Below the pieces are notes generated by a model, which worked only from the letters and a program-made list of their open reading frames with translations, did not search any database and was not told where the DNA came from. The position numbers and the translations under genes were made by a program. A DNA stretch of 63,174 bases, filler included, from Sluysia triapertura (lineage: Eukaryota): assembly GCA_046118255.1 (NCBI GenBank). It is 5 parts of 5 records of this genome, joined end to end, with 100 filler letters (N's around TTAATTAATTAA, not from the genome) between each part and the next. Parts side by side here need not be neighbours in the genome. Positions count along the whole stretch, not along the records: positions 1 to 11,887 come from JBJNIA010160377.1; 4 more parts are not named here. One strand, 5' to 3'. Positions 1 to 23,118 of this stretch are shown in pieces (the first letter of the stretch is position 1; each line of letters opens with the position of its first letter).

Positions 1-439
1 AATAGAATGGTTAAATACTATAATAATTATTAGGAAATAAAAATAAATAAATTAATTAATAAAATTAAATAATAATTATTTATTATTTAATAATAATAAT
101 ATATAATAATATATAATAATAATTATAATAATATTTATTATATTATTAAATAATAACTATTTTTTCTATTTACAGAATTTACAACAAATTATTTACAATA
201 AATTAAAATATTACATATTATATTACATATATTACAAATATTACATTTGCACATTTACAAAATAAAATATTCAATTATTAACAATGATCAACTTTATATC
301 AGTACAATGATCAATAAAATTTTAATTTTAAATTTTTAAACATTTTTGATGAGCGTCGCAAATCTAAACAAAATTTATTATTTTTTCAAAATTTACTACC
401 AATTTATTGCTCGTTTATTATTATTTTATTATGATGTAA

Positions 440-780
440 AATTTTATGATTTTAAAATTTTATAGCTTCAAATATAAAATCTGTACTACAAAAAAGTCTT
501 TCCATAGTTAATTCTAACTACGCAAAATATTAATTAAAATATTTTTGATTACATATTTCGAAGATTACTAAAAGCTTTTAAAGGTAAGGCCAACTAAAGG
601 AGTTTCCTTTTTAACCAACGTTACAAATTTTTTTTACTCATATCTACAAAATCCAACGGCTGGCCCTAGCTGGTAAGTCCAGTACGTTGATGAAGTCACG
701 TTAAGCTTTTACTTTATTCTATTGCCTTACTTTTAATTTTCTCATATAGAATAAACTGGTGCCCAGAGTGAGCACCAGTA
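440..780 (-). repeat. Third (inverted) copy of the hairpin-bearing repeat, with PBS-like TGGTGCTC at 770-777
   Basis: The reverse complement of 648-702 matches 7017-7070, and 455-515 matches ~7290-7355. Confidence 0.7.
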
Positions 781-1338
781 TTGAAATAATATAAAAGATA
801 AAAGGTTTTAAGAAGAATTTAAGGACCAGTATTGAAATAATATAAATAAACATAAAGATTTTTAAAAAGAATTTGTAACGAATTTTTAAATAATTTTTTA
901 AATAATTTATTTTAAAACCATGATATACTGAGGGGAAAATTTTAAATTAAAATCTTATAATATTTGATTAAAGATCCTTAAATTAATTACTTGATTTTTA
1001 TTCTTAATTTGTTAAATACATTTTTAGCTTTTATACATAAAATATGTAGTATCATTTTAATAAAATCGTTGTTCGAGTATAAGTTTTAATTTATATAAGA
1101 TTATGTGAGACCATCGTTAGCACTGGGATTATATATTTAGTTAGAGACATGTTTTATAAATAAATATATTAAGATTATTAACTTAAAGTTACAGGAACAC
1201 CCACTATATGTTGTAAGTCGTTTATTGTAACTGGACCCTGATAAATTTTATTTTGCTGTAGGTTTAGATATAAGGAAACCACAGCACACACACATACTTA
1301 AATAAAAATTACATATCAAAAACTACAAATTTAGTATT

Positions 1339-1855: not shown

Positions 1856-2093
1856 TTTAAGAATGAGGGTCCAGAAACGTAATGACATCAGAACAAAATC
1901 AATAAGATCACGCAGCAAAAGTCAATCCAAAGACTACTATTTGCAGAAGGAAATGAATAGTATCGAAAATTACATAAAAGAAGAAATTACATTTGTCGTT
2001 TTTGATATCTAATTTTTATTTAAGTTTGCGATTCGGTTACTTTTGAGTTTTATCTTACTTAGACTTACGAATAAAGTAAAAGATTTTCTTATG

Positions 2094-3050
2094 GTGAGTC
2101 CACCAACGTACTAGGCCTACCACTTAGGGCTAGCCGTTGGGTTTAAATGAAAAAAAACTTTATATGGTGGTCAAAATTTTACTTGCACATTATGGCTTAG
2201 TAGTTGGGTACAAAATTCCTTATAAATACTAACTATGAGTTTACAATAAATCCTATTAAATGGATTTGTAAATCAATTTTACAGCACCAGAATAAAATTG
2301 GAAAAATCGTATACAATTAACATAATTTATTATTTTGTAACCATACAATTTGCGTTGGATACGTTAAAATGAATCCTTTATCCAAAAATATCAAATAAAA
2401 ATAATTTACCAAAATATATTAGATACAAAATAGTTTACAAGATAATCAGTAATATTTTACGTTATTAATTATAAATGAGTTAATAAAATAATAACGATAA
2501 TTTAAAAAATGATTTTACAGATGAGCCTTAAATTGATTCCAAAATTTTATACAAAATATTTTAAGTGGATTTTACTAACGTATCTATTAAATGATACTAC
2601 AACTTATAAAAATTAAACTAACGATTTGCCCGAATTGTCCTCAAAAGCAAATATTTAAAAACAGTTTGTAAATTTAACTTGTGTGGTTTATGTGAAAATG
2701 TTACTTACTATATAGTAATTTTAGTCGTCCTTGAACGACTTCGGACAAACAAAAAATTTTAGCATTACTATTTAGTAAATATCAAAATTTTAAAATTTAC
2801 AAAAATAATCATTAATAATCATTAAAATAATAATTTAAAATTTACAAATAATATTTAAAATATTATTAAAATAACAAATTTAAAAATTAAACATAATAAT
2901 ATGAAATTTTACAAATAATATACTTACATATACCATAATAATTCCAATTAAATTGTTAAATCAATACAATTAATAAATAACACATAATGAATAAACAACA
3001 ACTGCAGAATAAACAATAATTGCACACCTAATGATCAATAGCACACATTA
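2094..3050 (+). repeat. Second copy of the hairpin-bearing dispersed repeat
   Basis: GTGAGTCCACCAACGTACTAGGCCTACCACTTAGGGCTAGCCGTTGG is nearly identical to 7020-7066. Shared downstream block at ~2268-2320. The right boundary is approximate. Confidence 0.7.
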
Positions 3051-5226: not shown

Positions 5227-5312
5227 CTTCGCTTCAAGTCTGGTTGGTGCATGTACGCCGTAATTCAAAGTATGGTCGTAATTGTACATACGCACACTAT
5301 ATAAGTGAACTC
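5227..5312 (+). pseudogene. CCCH zinc-finger relic within a GC-richer decayed coding patch (~5090-5418)
   Basis: LRFKSGWCMY/RNSKYGRNCTYAHYISEL with one frameshift fits the KT.LC...C.YG..C.YAH...EL pattern; the second Cys is lost. Confidence 0.55.
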
Positions 5313-5470
5313 ACAGATAACTTCTCTTGGACGTCATGCTTGACAAATCATGGTCATCGAATTCGACAACATGCTTTATCGTTGAGAGGATGTCTTCAGA
5401 AAACAACAAATGCCATAATTTAGAAGTATTCGTATTTTTTATTATAATTTTGTTGATACTTATATAACCA

Positions 5471-6891: not shown

Positions 6892-8150
6892 TGGTGCTCC
6901 AGCAATTCTCAAATTCGTCAAACATCCAACGGCATTATATCCCGCGTCTATGATAAGAGAGATTACAACTGTGGGGATTTTAAGATAAGATACTTATAGA
7001 ATAAAATAAGATTTTTAACGTGAGTCCACCAACGTACTAGGCTTACCAGTTAGGGCTAGCCGTTGGACTTATAGAAAAAAGATTTCTTAAGTAAAGGTGG
7101 AATAACTTCCTAAAGTGTCTGCAAATTTAGTATGACACTCTTAACTCAGTGAGTCTATTCAAATATTTTACTGTCTTTCAATATAACAATTCAGAATGGA
7201 AGTTAATGCAAATATTAATTTAAAAAATTATTAAAAGTAGTTTGCGTAAATCCTATGAAAAGGATTTGTAATAAATGATTTTACGATATCAGAATTAAAT
7301 TATGATAAGAGAAAGCTTTGCTACAGTAGGGATTTTATATTTAAAACTATAAAAATTAATTATTAATAAAAATGAAGTCTATAACAATTTATAATGTATA
7401 CTTAATAGGGTACAAATGCAAATATAAAAATTAATAAGTTACGGAGAATTATGGAGAATTATTGGTTAATTCTTCAAATAATAATAATTTATTAATAATT
7501 TTTTGGGAAACTATTATAAGTTTCGAAAATTAATTACAAAAATTTAGTGAATTTTACGGGAATATTGTTTACATTCAAAACTTAACATAATAAACTAACG
7601 TAGTATTTTTTTAAAAGGAAAAATTCGGTAAGTTTTATATTCATTTTTCCAAAATTTGTAAACTCTTTAAAGATTATGCCACTATTGTTCACTCTTCGTT
7701 CGAATAAAATATTTATAAAAATTGGTTGAAGTTGTCAAAAAAATATTGTGTGAAAGTTGTAAATTTTATGAGAATTTATACCTAATTTAACTGGCCTTGG
7801 CCAGATTAAAATAAAATATTTATTTTAATTATTAAAACAAAAATAATTCGATTTAAGTTTAATTTTAAAAAATATTAAAGTTTACATTTAATTAATAAAA
7901 TTACTCACGTTAGTTTATTCCAAAAACAATAATTATAACAATAATTAATTCAATAAAAATCGATAATTAAAACAAAACAGTCATTAATAAATTTTTAATC
8001 ATTATATAATTCAATCAATTCGATCAATTTATTATTTAACATTATTCAGCGCACAAATTAATCACTTTTACAATACGTTTGCACAATACGTCAATACATT
8101 TGTACTTTGTACACAACTTTCAATTATCAACAAACTGAGCAATCAAATTA
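6892..8150 (+). mobile_element. Dispersed ~1-kb repeat copy: PBS-like motif + conserved hairpin + AT-rich leader (probably LTR-retrotransposon 5' region)
   Basis: TGGTGCTCCAG at 6892-6902 and the hairpin at 7020-7070. Downstream blocks (AAATCCTATnAAAnGGATTTGTAA; GATTTTATATTTnAAnCTATAAAA) are shared with the copies at 2094 onward and at 1-780 (minus). The right boundary is approximate. Confidence 0.55.
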
Positions 8151-10009
8151 TTTGGGAAAAACAATTCTAGAGCTCGAACACTCTTTTGTTAATTAAATTT
8201 TTAAGTTTGTTTTGTATAGTTTGAACACTCAAATTGAGTTAAAATATCCACGTAAAATATCAAATTTTCGGTTTGTCATTAAGATCAATCATAAAATCAA
8301 TTTAAAATCTAAATTCATCGCTTTTTAGTTGGCCCTTAAGGTCAATTATAAAATACTTATTAATAGGTAGAGTCTTCGGGCTAGACCTTTATTATGAATC
8401 ATTTTTTATTATTATTATACTTTTATTATTTACAAAATTTTTGATTATTAATATTTTTCTTTTTAATTTTATAAATTCGTCATTGTATTATTTTAATTTT
8501 TTTCAATTTATTCAATTTGTCGTATAATAAAATTTGAAGTTTTTTGTTTATGAGAATTTTGTGTTAAATTCCTGAATATAAGTCGAACTTACGTCTTTTA
8601 TATTATAGGAAATTTAAAAAATTAGATATGTTGTTATTAGTGGAAATAAGTGAATTACAGCGTAAACTCTTTAATGTATTAAGTAATTGAAGTTAAGCTT
8701 AAGAAATAAAAGAATAATACGTTTTTATATAAATATTAACTTAAATATTGTATATTCCCAAGGTTGGTTGTAATTATTTTTTAAATCATTTATTATCAGA
8801 CGATTTTGTCCATTATTGTTTTAGTTAAGGCAACGAGTATTTTTATACAGTTAATTTTTTAGAATTGTTTTCACGTAATTTTACAGGTACGCCTTTAGTA
8901 AGTCGTATACTGTAAACGGACTCTGAATAATAATACTCCCAGCAAGTCTGTAAATTATGGTACATGGTTCATGAAGTACCGTAATATATGGTACATGGTT
9001 CATGAAGTTGTATTATACATAATGCTAAAAGAAATTAATAATTTAGAAATTGATTCCAACTTAGTGTTAAGTTTTGCGTTAACTATTTCTCGTTGCTTCA
9101 ATGATGTTCGCGTATATAGAATCGACTCTACAAAAGATAAAAGTACGAATATTAGTACATTTATATCAGATTTTGATACTTATAATGTCGCCGCATGTCA
9201 TAGTAAATTCATAGCAGATTATTCAACAGAACTTAGTGTCATAAACAATCTTGTTACTGCAACAATCTCACCTCTAACCGACTTTTTATAAATCAACAGA
9301 ATTATATACTATATAAAACAGCACAATGCCCGTTTCAATCGAATGATTTAGGTCAATGTAGTAAATTCGGACAATCTTGCGTCTTTTATCAAAATATCAA
9401 TGAAATTAGTTATATTGATACTAAATCAAATGTTATTTATGATCATATACAACAATCTAATAATGGCAAATTAAAATAATGTTAAAGTTAAAAACAAATT
9501 GAAAGGTAACAAGAATTATAATGATGTCGTTGAAGTTATACAAATAACTTTGAATTTGAAGTAACTTTATTCTTTTGTTTTCGAACACTATTTAATGCTT
9601 ATCCCTTTTATTTTAGGAATCCACAATTAGAGAAATTCGACTTTATTTATCAGAAAAATATAATGTATACCATTCAAAACTTTAAATCGTAATAACAAAG
9701 TTGTGGAGGGCGTCAAGTAATTTAATTCTAATAAATTATAATTAGTTCTATTTAATTTTAATAAATTATGTTTAATTCTATTTATTTTCGAATATGTATT
9801 AAAAAATTTAAAGAATTTAATTAACAAAAAACTATCGAACTTTACTTTAAAAACAATTAGTGAAATACAAAATTTTTTTATCAATGAACTAGGCCTAATG
9901 CCTTTAAAAAGTAACGAGTTTAATAAAATGACAAAATTTGAGATTTTATTTATACTGTAAAATATAACAAAAAATATATAACAGTACTCACATCACTATA
10001 AGCAAAGAA

Positions 10010-11095
10010 TCTAGAGAAATGAGTGATACGAATATTGACAGTGCAATACTATGTTTCAAAAACGAATAATAGATGATATGAGTAATGATATGGGCAATAA
10101 AATATTGTTTATTAAGAAATTACTGCTGGTAACAATTATCAATAGTAACAAATGGATCCATCCAAACAATACAAATTGCTTAAAATAATATTTTTTGTCA
10201 ATATCAAAACGAAAATCACTAAACCAATTAAATAACAATGCAGTTAATCTTCTTTAACCAATAAAATTCGAAAATAACCAATGAGACTTTCTCCGAACAA
10301 GAAATAATTTGATGTGAACAAAAAAAAGACAAAGAACGAAATAACTTCAAACCATAGTAACGGTAAATATTATAACCGATTTTGATGACTGCATGGAAAA
10401 CCTTTATTTGAATTAGCATTACTAATATAAGTGAAACTATCGGTCCATGTGATCCATATATAACATTTTGAGCAGCAGTTCGTGCAATTTCAATATTGAT
10501 TGGTAGCTTTGCTGACAAAGTAGCATTTGGTTGTGTAGATTGTGGATTTCTTTTAATACTAATGCTACATTTCCTGTAAACGAATTCCATTCTGATAAAG
10601 CTGGAGTGTTCATTTTTCCAAATTCATTTCTATAATCGAAATTTTTCTCTATAGTAGCATCACTTGTAGACTTACAAACAACAATTGGTGCTTTCAGTGA
10701 ATATGAATCTTCCAAATTATTTGTAATTCCAAATCCACAGTTTTACTAGAATTATTGATGGTTAATTTAATTGTTATTTTTGTCGAATTTTTTGGTAAAT
10801 TATAATCAGTCAAATAAACATTACAACTGAATACTGGTGTATCAATTTCGATAAGTTTTATCAGAGGATCATCAAATGAAATTTCTAAATTTTGAAATAT
10901 TCCATAGATAAGTGAAAGTTGATCAGTCACTATTGATGGATAATCCAACTGAACTGAGTATCTATTTTGAACATGCACTGCTTTTGTTTCTTCTTTCAGG
11001 TTTGCTTTCCACTCACCAAGTAACTTTTTAACGCTTATATCATTATTAAATTCATGATTTAAAAATATAATTAATATTAAGAACATAAACCACAT
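10010..11095 (-). pseudogene. Frameshifted membrane-protein gene (signal peptide, ectodomain, hydrophobic segments); possibly a divergent pentameric ligand-gated ion channel
   Basis: Four overlapping ORFs tile one strand with frameshifts. The N-terminus is hydrophobic (MWFMFLILIIFL) and the C-terminus has TM-like segments. The family assignment is weak. Confidence 0.45.
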
Positions 11096-23065: not shown

Positions 23066-23118
23066 AAATCCAACGAACTAGCCGTAACACGTAAGTCTAG
23101 GATCGTAAGTGAACTCAT
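23066..23118 (-). repeat. Fourth, most diverged copy of the hairpin motif
   Basis: Reverse complement TGAGTTCACTTACGATCCTAGACTTACGTGTTACGGCTAGTTCGTTGGATTT aligns to the other three copies. Confidence 0.65.

What the first reader, a model, noticed from the sequence alone, without database searches (positions are those of the whole stretch)
7020..7070. Four-copy ~50-nt GC-rich hairpin with compensatory substitutions: candidate undescribed structured RNA element
Seen: the motif recurs at 648-702(-), 2094-2145(+), 7020-7070(+) and 23066-23118(-) and is far better conserved than its AT-rich flanks. It folds as an outer stem CCAACG/CGTTGG and an inner stem CTAG/CTAG. The 648 copy changes both inner arms to CTGG/CCAG (A-U to G-C) and has a C-G to U-G wobble. 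The 23066 copy gains a pair (ACGA/TCGT). The wobble favours the strand shown at 7020. Inference: this is a selected RNA structure. Its position 70-120 nt after a PBS-like motif in two copies suggests a retrotransposon packaging or dimerisation signal (CTAG is self-complementary). It has no hammerhead CUGAnGA/GAAA core.
Basis: partly seen in the sequence, partly recalled or inferred. Interest (0 to 1): 0.75.

Follow-up and report, generated by a model that had tools for sequence, protein, structure and literature searches.

The report
Conserved hairpin inside retrotransposon LTRs
The GC-rich hairpin is real and shows compensatory base changes, but it is not a free-standing RNA gene: it is the best-conserved part of the long terminal repeat of a very abundant LTR retrotransposon, lying just upstream of the site where a methionine tRNA primes reverse transcription.

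Summary
The motif is present at 647-699(-), 2094-2146(+) and 7020-7072(+). It is a genome-wide repeat: each of three searches of the 619-Mb genome gave about 1,550-1,760 first-look candidates.

The 7020 copy lies 50 nt inside a 1,144-bp solo LTR (6970-8113, TGT...ACA ends, 4-bp target duplication CAAC). In 5' LTR copies the LTR end is followed by a 10-nt spacer, an 18-nt primer-binding site matching the 3' end of elongator tRNA-Met(CAU), a ~450-nt leader and a gag ORF with a CCHC zinc knuckle. All of these are on the strand opposite to 7020(+). The hairpin therefore sits in the U5 (or R/U5) part of the LTR, about 70-125 nt upstream of the PBS in the element's RNA.

The core is 89% identical among 98 copies; its flanks are 47-55% identical. 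In more distant LTR families of the same genome the stems have different sequences but still pair (8 of 13 pairs compensatory among 12 family representatives).

Next to the hairpin is a conserved 8-mer complementary to the TΨC arm of the primer tRNA, and then a U5-leader stem. This layout resembles retroviral reverse-transcription initiation domains.

Verdict: a real, selected structure; a new member of a known kind; moderate interest.

The parts
6970..8113 (-). Solo LTR, 1,144 bp, with the element's sense on the minus strand. On the plus strand it starts TGTGGGG and ends TTGTACA.
   Evidence: The repeat extent was defined by BLAST against 29 other copies. The ends are TGT...ACA, and the 4-bp duplication CAAC flanks them. 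The sister copy in L003 has the same ends and the duplication TGTA.
6966..6969 (.). Target-site duplication CAAC, left copy. The right copy is at 8114-8117.
7029..7066 (.). Hairpin core: outer stem CCAACG/CGTTGG, inner stem CTAG/CTAG, and an apical 4-bp stem with a U-G pair in the 7020(+) sense. In the element's RNA it is the reverse complement.
   Evidence: Folding gives -20.5 kcal/mol, z -2.7, on the + strand. 94.7% of cells are paired against 47% or less when the partners are slid. RNAalifold finds the same helix de novo on 12 family representatives, with 8 of 13 pairs compensatory.
7020..7027 (-). 8-mer GTGAGTCC in the + sense (GTGAGTTC in the other families). It is identical to positions 49-56 of the primer tRNA-Met, so in the element's RNA it is complementary to the TΨC arm (a PAS-like motif).
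   Evidence: Comparison with the tRNA. The GAGTYC core is kept in the deep families whose stems differ; three have substitutions in the first two bases.
6997..7005 (-). TAGAATAAA in the + sense: the U5 strand of a U5-leader stem. In 5' LTR copies it pairs with the 10-nt spacer between the LTR end and the PBS.
   Evidence: A 10-bp stem is predicted in all 5 of the 5' LTR copies folded. There is a compensatory change in L092 (TTCTG with CAGAA) and a different complementary pair in L091.
1..746 (+). 5' LTR of a truncated element on the plus strand, probably cut by the contig start. Its hairpin is at 647-699, and its 3' end reads ...CTCATA.
747..756 (+). Spacer TAGAATAAAC: the leader strand of the U5-leader stem.
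757..774 (+). Primer-binding site: the first 16 of 18 nt are complementary to the 3' end of tRNA-Met(CAU)+CCA. It is followed by ~100 nt of leader (775-872), after which homology to other copies stops.
   Evidence: The 18/18 version is in L034, L057 and L083.
2041..2624 (-). Third LTR, of another subfamily, with the element's sense on the minus strand; hairpin at 2094-2146. The start is approximate and the far end was not determined (at least 2624).
   Evidence: The body matches L024:306-911 at 67% over 622 nt. Sequence.
8875..8925 (+). Diverged family member with the same architecture (GAGTCC motif, 7-bp outer stem TTTACAG/CTGTAAA, 4-bp inner stem TACG/CGTA), matched on the minus strand, so the element's sense is plus.
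   Evidence: CM hit of 26.1 bits, E~0.005. Sister copy at L075:1330-1377, with 130 nt of shared repeat.

Best explanation
The motif is a cis-acting stem-loop in the U5 (or R/U5) part of the LTR of a high-copy LTR retrotransposon lineage primed by elongator tRNA-Met(CAU).

Read in the element's RNA sense (the reverse complement of 7020+), the order is:
- the hairpin;
- an 8-nt motif (GRACUCAC) complementary to the TΨC arm of the primer tRNA;
- a U-rich strand that pairs with the 10-nt spacer just before the PBS (a U5-leader stem enclosing the LTR terminus);
- the 18-nt PBS;
- a ~450-nt leader and then gag.

Shown: the identity as an LTR, the orientation, the PBS/tRNA match, the hairpin covariation and the conservation of the 8-mer.

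Inferred: the hairpin and the adjacent 8-mer are part of the reverse-transcription initiation domain. They would hold or present the tRNA-contacting motif, as the U5-IR/TΨC interaction does in avian retroviruses and the primer activation signal does in HIV-1. The same sequence would also fold in the minus-strand strong-stop cDNA.
For: LTR identity: TGT...ACA ends and 4-bp target duplications in two copies.

Flanking element parts: in 7 of ~100 copies the LTR end is followed by the spacer and PBS. The PBS matches 18/18 the 3' end of the tRNA-Met(CAT) gene at L096:1452-1526 plus CCA. A gag ORF lies downstream on the same strand (L083:2093-3079; zf-CCHC 23.2 bits, above the cutoff; Retrotrans_gag 20.5 bits), and is homologous in L057, L034 and L022.

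Hairpin: core identity 0.89 against 0.47-0.55 in the flanks. 94.7% of cells paired against 47% or less for slid controls. 11 of 14 pairs have double changes, with 0 of 500 shuffles reaching this. An independent RNAalifold run on 12 family representatives recovers the helix with 8 of 13 compensatory pairs.

Deep families (L085, L043, window 8875, L075, L044, L091, L056) have different stem sequences but keep the GAGTYC core of GTGAGTYC directly beside the hairpin.

The U5-leader stem is predicted in 5 of 5 copies and has a compensatory change in L092.

The HIV-1 PAS is likewise an 8-nt U5 motif complementary to the tRNA TΨC arm (PMC1865047).
Against: - No RNA data: the one run that holds the locus is a DNA run. 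The transcription start, R/U5 border and strand usage are therefore unmapped.
- An 8-mer shared with the tRNA arises by chance in ~7% of shuffled sequences. The canonical family has 7/8 plus a G-U.
- The same 8-mer is necessarily also complementary to the 3' part of the PBS, so it may mask the PBS rather than contact the tRNA.
- In the three main families the 7020(+) sense folds better (-20.5 against -14.7 kcal/mol) and carries fixed G-U pairs that are A-C mismatches in the RNA sense.
- No pol gene or paired LTRs could be fetched.
- The gag ORF has no hits in the word search.
Confidence: 0.6

Rival explanations
1. The functional form is the 7020(+) strand, that is, the minus-strand strong-stop cDNA (or an antisense transcript). 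There the hairpin, extended by the GAGTYCA/TGGAYTT helix, would act in first-strand transfer, as the cTAR DNA hairpin does in HIV-1.
For: In the main families the + sense folds better. The fixed G-T pairs (apical T24-G34; G3-T51, G5-T49 and T7-G47 in the extended helix) are tolerated only in this sense. One-sided changes (C-G to T-G, T-G to C-G) keep pairing in this sense.
Against: The extended helix is not supported in the deep families: position 45 covaries with position 12, not with position 9. Deep families show no strand bias in energy. Wobble counts in decayed copies are symmetric, 20 against 23. G-T pairs add little stability in DNA.
Confidence: 0.15
2. One reading: a genomic-RNA dimerisation or packaging signal, with a kissing loop.
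For: In the RNA sense the apical loop holds a 6-nt palindrome or near-palindrome: ACCGGU in the 'TTATCAAGG' family and ACUGGU, with two G-U pairs, in the canonical family (sequences). The loop sequence is highly conserved within the main families.
Against: The loops differ and are not palindromic in the deep families. CTAG is in a stem and changes to CTGG/CCAG, TACG/CGTA and others. Known packaging and dimerisation signals mostly lie downstream of the PBS, whereas this lies upstream, in the LTR. No direct test was possible.
Confidence: 0.12
3. An R-region hairpin that controls transcription start or polyadenylation, like the TAR or poly(A) hairpins. It would mark the U3/R border rather than act in priming.
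For: Conservation between subfamilies begins about 10-15 nt beyond the hairpin and runs to the LTR end, about 125 nt. That is the size of R-U5 in many small LTR elements (my own knowledge). The canonical family has UAUAAA directly 5' of the hairpin in the RNA sense.
Against: The UAUAAA is not kept in the other families. There are no end-mapping data.
Confidence: 0.1
4. A free-standing structured non-coding RNA, a miRNA-like hairpin, a SINE head, or a DNA-transposon or Helitron end.
For: A ~60-nt imperfect hairpin with ~22-nt arms and a high copy number. A tRNA-like piece lies next to some copies.
Against: No Rfam hit at E<=1. No tRNA or A/B-box head: ARAGORN finds none. The tRNA piece is the antisense PBS or a 3' fragment. 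The element has LTR ends, target duplications, a PBS and gag. The hairpin lies 50-100 nt from the terminus, not 10-12 nt as in Helitrons, and there are no terminal inverted repeats beyond TGT/ACA.
Confidence: 0.03

Closest known systems
U5-IR stem-loop, U5-leader stem and U5-TΨC interaction of avian sarcoma/leukosis viruses (my own knowledge; U5-IR is mentioned in PMC3601003)
   Same: There is a stem-loop in U5 just upstream of the PBS. A stem is formed between U5 and the leader flanking the PBS. A short U5 sequence is complementary to the TΨC region of the primer tRNA.
   Different: The primer is elongator tRNA-Met, not tRNA-Trp. Here the tRNA-complementary 8-mer lies beside the hairpin, not in its loop. 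The element is an endogenous LTR retrotransposon of an AT-rich eukaryote, with no env seen. Nothing has been tested functionally.
HIV-1 primer activation signal (PAS) in U5 (PMC1865047, PMC3675109)
   Same: It is an 8-nt motif in U5, tens of nt upstream of the PBS, complementary to the 5' strand of the T stem plus the TΨC of the primer tRNA (positions 49-56 here; the TΨC arm in HIV-1).
   Different: In HIV-1 the PAS is masked inside the extended PBS stem. Here it lies between the hairpin and the U5-leader stem, and can instead pair with the 3' part of the PBS. Its function here is only inferred.
Extended tRNAiMet-template contacts of yeast Ty1 (boxes 0, 1, 2.1) and the bipartite PBS of Ty3 (my own knowledge; review PMC4974528)
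   Same: They are LTR retrotransposons in which regions outside the PBS pair with the T and D arms of a Met tRNA primer.
   Different: Ty1 and Ty3 use initiator tRNA-Met and the extra boxes lie downstream of the PBS or at the 3' end. Here the primer is the elongator tRNA-Met and the motif is upstream, in the LTR.
Conserved LTR modules found by HMMs (Benachenhou et al. 2013, PMC3601003)
   Same: U3 is variable, the R/U5-proximal part is better conserved, and the residual conservation is linked to stem-loops.
   Different: That work gives general LTR architecture. This particular hairpin family and its covariation are not described there.

Membership tests
LTR retrotransposon LTR | TG...CA termini with a short inverted repeat | tested here: met
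   The window LTR 6970-8113 starts TGTGGGG and ends TTGTACA. Other copies start TGTGAG or TGTGGG.
LTR retrotransposon LTR | Target-site duplication flanking the insertion | tested here: met
   4-bp CAAC in the window and 4-bp TGTA in L003. Only two copies were examined.
LTR retrotransposon LTR | PBS complementary to a tRNA 3' end next to the 5' LTR | tested here: met
   18/18 match to tRNA-Met(CAT)+CCA, 10 nt after the LTR end, in L034, L057 and L083. Window 757-774 matches over its first 16 of 18 nt.
LTR retrotransposon LTR | gag downstream of the PBS on the same strand | tested here: met
   L083:2093-3079 is a 329-aa open frame with zf-CCHC above the Pfam cutoff and Retrotrans_gag just below it. 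It is homologous in three other loci.
LTR retrotransposon LTR | pol (RT, RNase H, integrase), two direct LTRs and a PPT | not tested
The superfamily (Ty3/gypsy, BEL/Pao or copia) is therefore open.
Retroviral PAS / U5-TΨC contact | U5 motif complementary to the T arm of the same tRNA that fits the PBS | tested here: met
   GTGAGTTC equals tRNA positions 49-56 (8/8) in two main families, with a 10-mer in the L026 type. The canonical family has 7/8 plus a G-U. The chance rate is ~7% per sequence.
Retroviral PAS / U5-TΨC contact | The motif enhances tRNA-primed initiation | not testable with these tools
   Needs primer-extension assays.
Any Rfam family | Covariance-model match | tested here: not met
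   0 matches at E<=1 over the whole piece.
tRNA-derived SINE | tRNA-like 5' head with A and B boxes on the element's sense strand | tested here: not met
   ARAGORN finds no tRNA in the window or in six loci with the tRNA-like piece. Only the 3' 18-39 nt of the tRNA are present, next to the LTR end.
Kissing-loop dimerisation site (HIV-1 DIS type) | Self-complementary 6-mer exposed in the apical loop, kept as a palindrome when it varies | tested here: inconclusive
   ACCGGU in one family, ACUGGU (G-U) in the canonical family, and no palindrome in several deep families.

The most novel reading that the evidence does not exclude
The hairpin and the adjacent GRACUCAC motif would form a primer-activation module that contacts the TΨC arm of elongator tRNA-Met. 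It would be conserved across many otherwise unalignable LTR families of one genome. That would show that PAS-type control of reverse-transcription initiation, so far documented in retroviruses, also operates in a non-retroviral LTR retrotransposon lineage, with a natural covariation series ready for testing.
Probability: 0.3. Interest if true: 0.5.

Novelty: new member of a known kind. Interest (0 to 1): 0.35.

Why it matters
It changes the annotation. What looked like a rare new RNA is the signature of a retrotransposon LTR family with at least ~1,500-1,800 candidate copies, so it can be masked or annotated as such.

It also offers a natural series of LTR families in which the stems vary but an 8-mer matching the primer tRNA's T arm largely persists (the GAGTYC core throughout). 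That series is useful for testing how far retrovirus-style control of tRNA-primed initiation extends to LTR retrotransposons.

The covariance model and the PBS give a simple way to find and orient these LTRs in this fragmented assembly.

Tried and rejected
- SINE head, or a 5S/7SL/tRNA origin for the hairpin: no Rfam or ARAGORN support. A by-eye resemblance of the reverse strand to 5S helix IV/V was dropped.
- 3'-anchored, 5'-truncated LINE/SINE tail read on the minus strand (suggested by coverage that falls away from the head): replaced by 'variable U3, conserved R-U5' once the PBS and gag were found.
- Helitron or MITE end: the hairpin is too far from the terminus and there are no TIRs.
- Common central target between head-to-head copies: the intervening DNA is not shared.
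- Expression and strand: the look-up of sequencing runs gave one DNA run and no RNA; read laying was not used because DNA contigs cannot show strand or ends.
- gag word search: no hit at E<=1e-5. The large HMMER search was not spent because Pfam had already named the protein.
- Window ORFs: no pol or gag; only a weak UEV hit.
- RNAalifold on the gappy CM alignment and on 81 decayed copies gave near-zero energies and was uninformative. The 12-representative run and the pair counts were used instead.
- Target duplications for the LTR+tRNA chimeras: inconclusive.

Full report
**Observation**

The motif is present at 7020-7072(+), 2094-2146(+) and 647-699(-). The strict 38-nt pattern is not expected by chance: 0 matches in 200 shuffles. 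The window is AT-rich (about 24% GC), has few ORFs, no tRNA genes and no Rfam match at E<=1.

**It is a high-copy repeat**

The window's genome is 619 Mb in 263,945 contigs, which indicates a eukaryote. A 76-nt query around 7020 gave 1,760 first-look candidates, and all 40 scored matches were 95-100% identical. Two variant copies used as queries gave 1,648 and 1,554 candidates. These sets probably overlap, and the counts are lower bounds.

The 7020 copy lies 50 nt inside a repeat that BLAST against 29 other copies delimits to about 6970-8030 or beyond. Its first ~180 nt are 85-93% identical between copies; its body is only 66-85% identical. Over 98 copies the 48-nt core is 0.89 identical pairwise, against 0.55 upstream and 0.47 downstream.

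**What the repeat is**

In 7 of about 100 copies, the sequence just outside the 'TGTGAG/TGTGGG' end of the repeat is the same. Read on the strand opposite to 7020(+), it gives in order:
- the LTR end ...CTCACA;
- a 10-nt spacer TAGAATAAAC;
- TGGTGCCCAGAGTGAGGA;
- about 450 nt of shared leader;
- an open frame with a CCHC zinc knuckle.

The frame L083:2093-3079 (329 aa, open to the edge of the locus) scores zf-CCHC 23.2 bits (cutoff 20.8) and Retrotrans_gag 20.5 bits (cutoff 24.1). It is homologous in L057, L034 and L022.

The 18-mer is the exact complement of the 3' end plus CCA of a tRNA-Met(CAT) gene found at L096:1452-1526. By its sequence this is the elongator, not the initiator, species (my own knowledge of eukaryotic tRNA-Met).

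The window copy is a solo LTR, 6970-8113, with TGT...ACA ends and a 4-bp target duplication CAAC. The L003 copy has the same ends and the duplication TGTA.

At the left of the window there is a truncated element on the plus strand: an LTR up to 746, the spacer at 747-756, the PBS at 757-774 (first 16 of 18 nt match) and about 100 nt of leader. The 2094 copy belongs to a third LTR of another subfamily, on the minus strand.

The superfamily is therefore open. A 4-bp duplication, TGT/ACA ends and the gag type are compatible with Ty3/gypsy-like elements (my own knowledge).

**Position and strand**

In the element's RNA the hairpin is the reverse complement of 7020(+). It lies in the LTR about 60-115 nt before the LTR's 3' end, which is about 70-125 nt upstream of the PBS.

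Over 98 copies the two main stems carry 20 G-T pairs and 23 A-C pairs, which is the symmetric result expected from neutral decay of dead copies.

The three main families do fold better in the 7020(+) sense (-20.5 against -14.7 kcal/mol). They also carry fixed G-T pairs in an apical stem and in an alternative outer helix. But the deep families show no consistent strand bias, and the alternative helix loses its covariation there. The 7020(+) sense is also the sense of the minus-strand strong-stop cDNA, so a role in that molecule stays open.

**Is the structure selected?**

Within the main families the sequence is nearly invariant. Most of the variation is post-insertion noise, which says nothing about structure. 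One family-level compensatory change stands out: A-U to G-C, 20 rows against 56.

The decisive evidence comes from more distant LTR families found in the same loci. These are L085:2580-2634, L043:417-471, window 8875-8925 with L075:1330-1377, L044:56-115, L091:1100-1151 and L056:193-250. They keep the same layout: a GAGTYC-containing motif, a 5-8-bp outer stem, a two-base spacer and a 3-4-bp inner stem. Their stem sequences are different, for example TCTATG/CATAGA, TTTACAG/CTGTAAA with TACG/CGTA, and CCTAACAG/CTGTTAGG.

The counts are:
- On the MAFFT alignment, 94.7% of cells pair, against 47% or less when the partners are slid. 6 pairs have double changes, and the covariation score is above all 500 shuffles.
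- On the model-fitted alignment, 11 of 14 pairs have double changes, and 0 of 500 shuffles reach this. This alignment leans towards the structure.
- RNAalifold on an independent alignment of 12 family representatives predicts the same hairpin, with 8 of 13 pairs kept through changes on both sides.

**The neighbourhood of the hairpin**

Directly beside the hairpin is GTGAGTYC in the 7020+ sense. It equals positions 49-56 of the primer tRNA, that is, the 5' strand of the T stem plus TΨC. In the RNA sense it is therefore complementary to that arm. An 8-mer match arises by chance in about 7% of shuffles. However, the GAGTYC core of the motif persists in the deep families where the stems have been replaced; three of them have substitutions in the first two bases.

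Further on, a U-rich 9-10-mer in U5 is complementary to the spacer before the PBS. A 10-bp stem is predicted in 5 of 5 5' LTR copies. L092 has a compensatory change in it (TTCTG with CAGAA), and L091 has a different complementary pair at the same place.

The layout is thus: stem-loop, then a T-arm-complementary motif, then a U5-leader stem, then the PBS. This resembles the initiation domains of avian retroviruses and the HIV-1 PAS, an 8-nt U5 motif complementary to the TΨC arm (PMC1865047). U5-IR and LTR stem-loops are discussed in PMC3601003.

One caveat applies. The 8-mer is necessarily also complementary to the 3' part of the PBS, and unconstrained folds pair the two. It may therefore mask the PBS rather than contact the tRNA.

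**Verdict**

It is a module of a retrotransposon LTR, not an independent RNA gene. Its most likely role is in tRNA-Met-primed reverse transcription (initiation, or strand transfer). Dimerisation or packaging, and R-region transcription or poly(A) control, remain as weaker rivals. It is a new member of a known kind. Interest is moderate, mainly for the natural covariation series and the conserved tRNA-matching 8-mer.

Noticed in passing
L021 (=L094), L092, L093, L095 and L091: the junction just outside the LTR end: In five independent loci, an LTR end plus spacer is followed not by 18 nt but by 38-39 nt of the tRNA-Met 3' part. All five begin at tRNA position 38/39 (...T CTGGAGGTC...), just 3' of position 37, and are then followed by unrelated flanks. 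L091 carries a different LTR family. They look like integrated plus-strand strong-stop products that read through into the primer tRNA as far as the modified base next to the anticodon. The genome has only about 10 matches to this tRNA segment, including the gene.
   Followed up: partly
L096:1452-1526: A tRNA-Met(CAT) gene of elongator type; its 3' end is the primer for this retrotransposon lineage.
   Followed up: yes
window 7791-7804: A second GC-rich palindrome, CTGGCCTTGGCCAG, lies in the U3-side part of the LTR and is conserved in most full-length copies. Its function was not examined.
   Followed up: no
window 5259-5314 (-): A weak covariance-model hit (16.6 bits, E~0.6) that starts with GTGAGTTC. 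It may be a badly decayed LTR of a further family.
   Followed up: partly
window 10437-10715 (-): An ORF piece with a sub-threshold UEV-domain match (23.2 bits, cutoff 27). It is probably an exon of a host gene.
   Followed up: no
window 1293-1333 and 1988-2028: A 41-nt inverted repeat, 90% complementary, with arms 654 nt apart. It lies in the stretch between the truncated element and the next LTR, and may be the ends of another small transposon.
   Followed up: no
window 8950-9008: Two tandem 28-31-nt units (93% identical) lie next to the diverged LTR copy at 8875-8925.
   Followed up: no
loci L003, L008, L018, L024, L026 and the window: LTRs of different subfamilies cluster. 5 of 29 loci have a second hairpin copy within 1.5 kb, and the 11.9-kb window has three to five. 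In L018 one LTR abuts the start of another. This points to nested insertion in repeat-rich DNA.
   Followed up: partly
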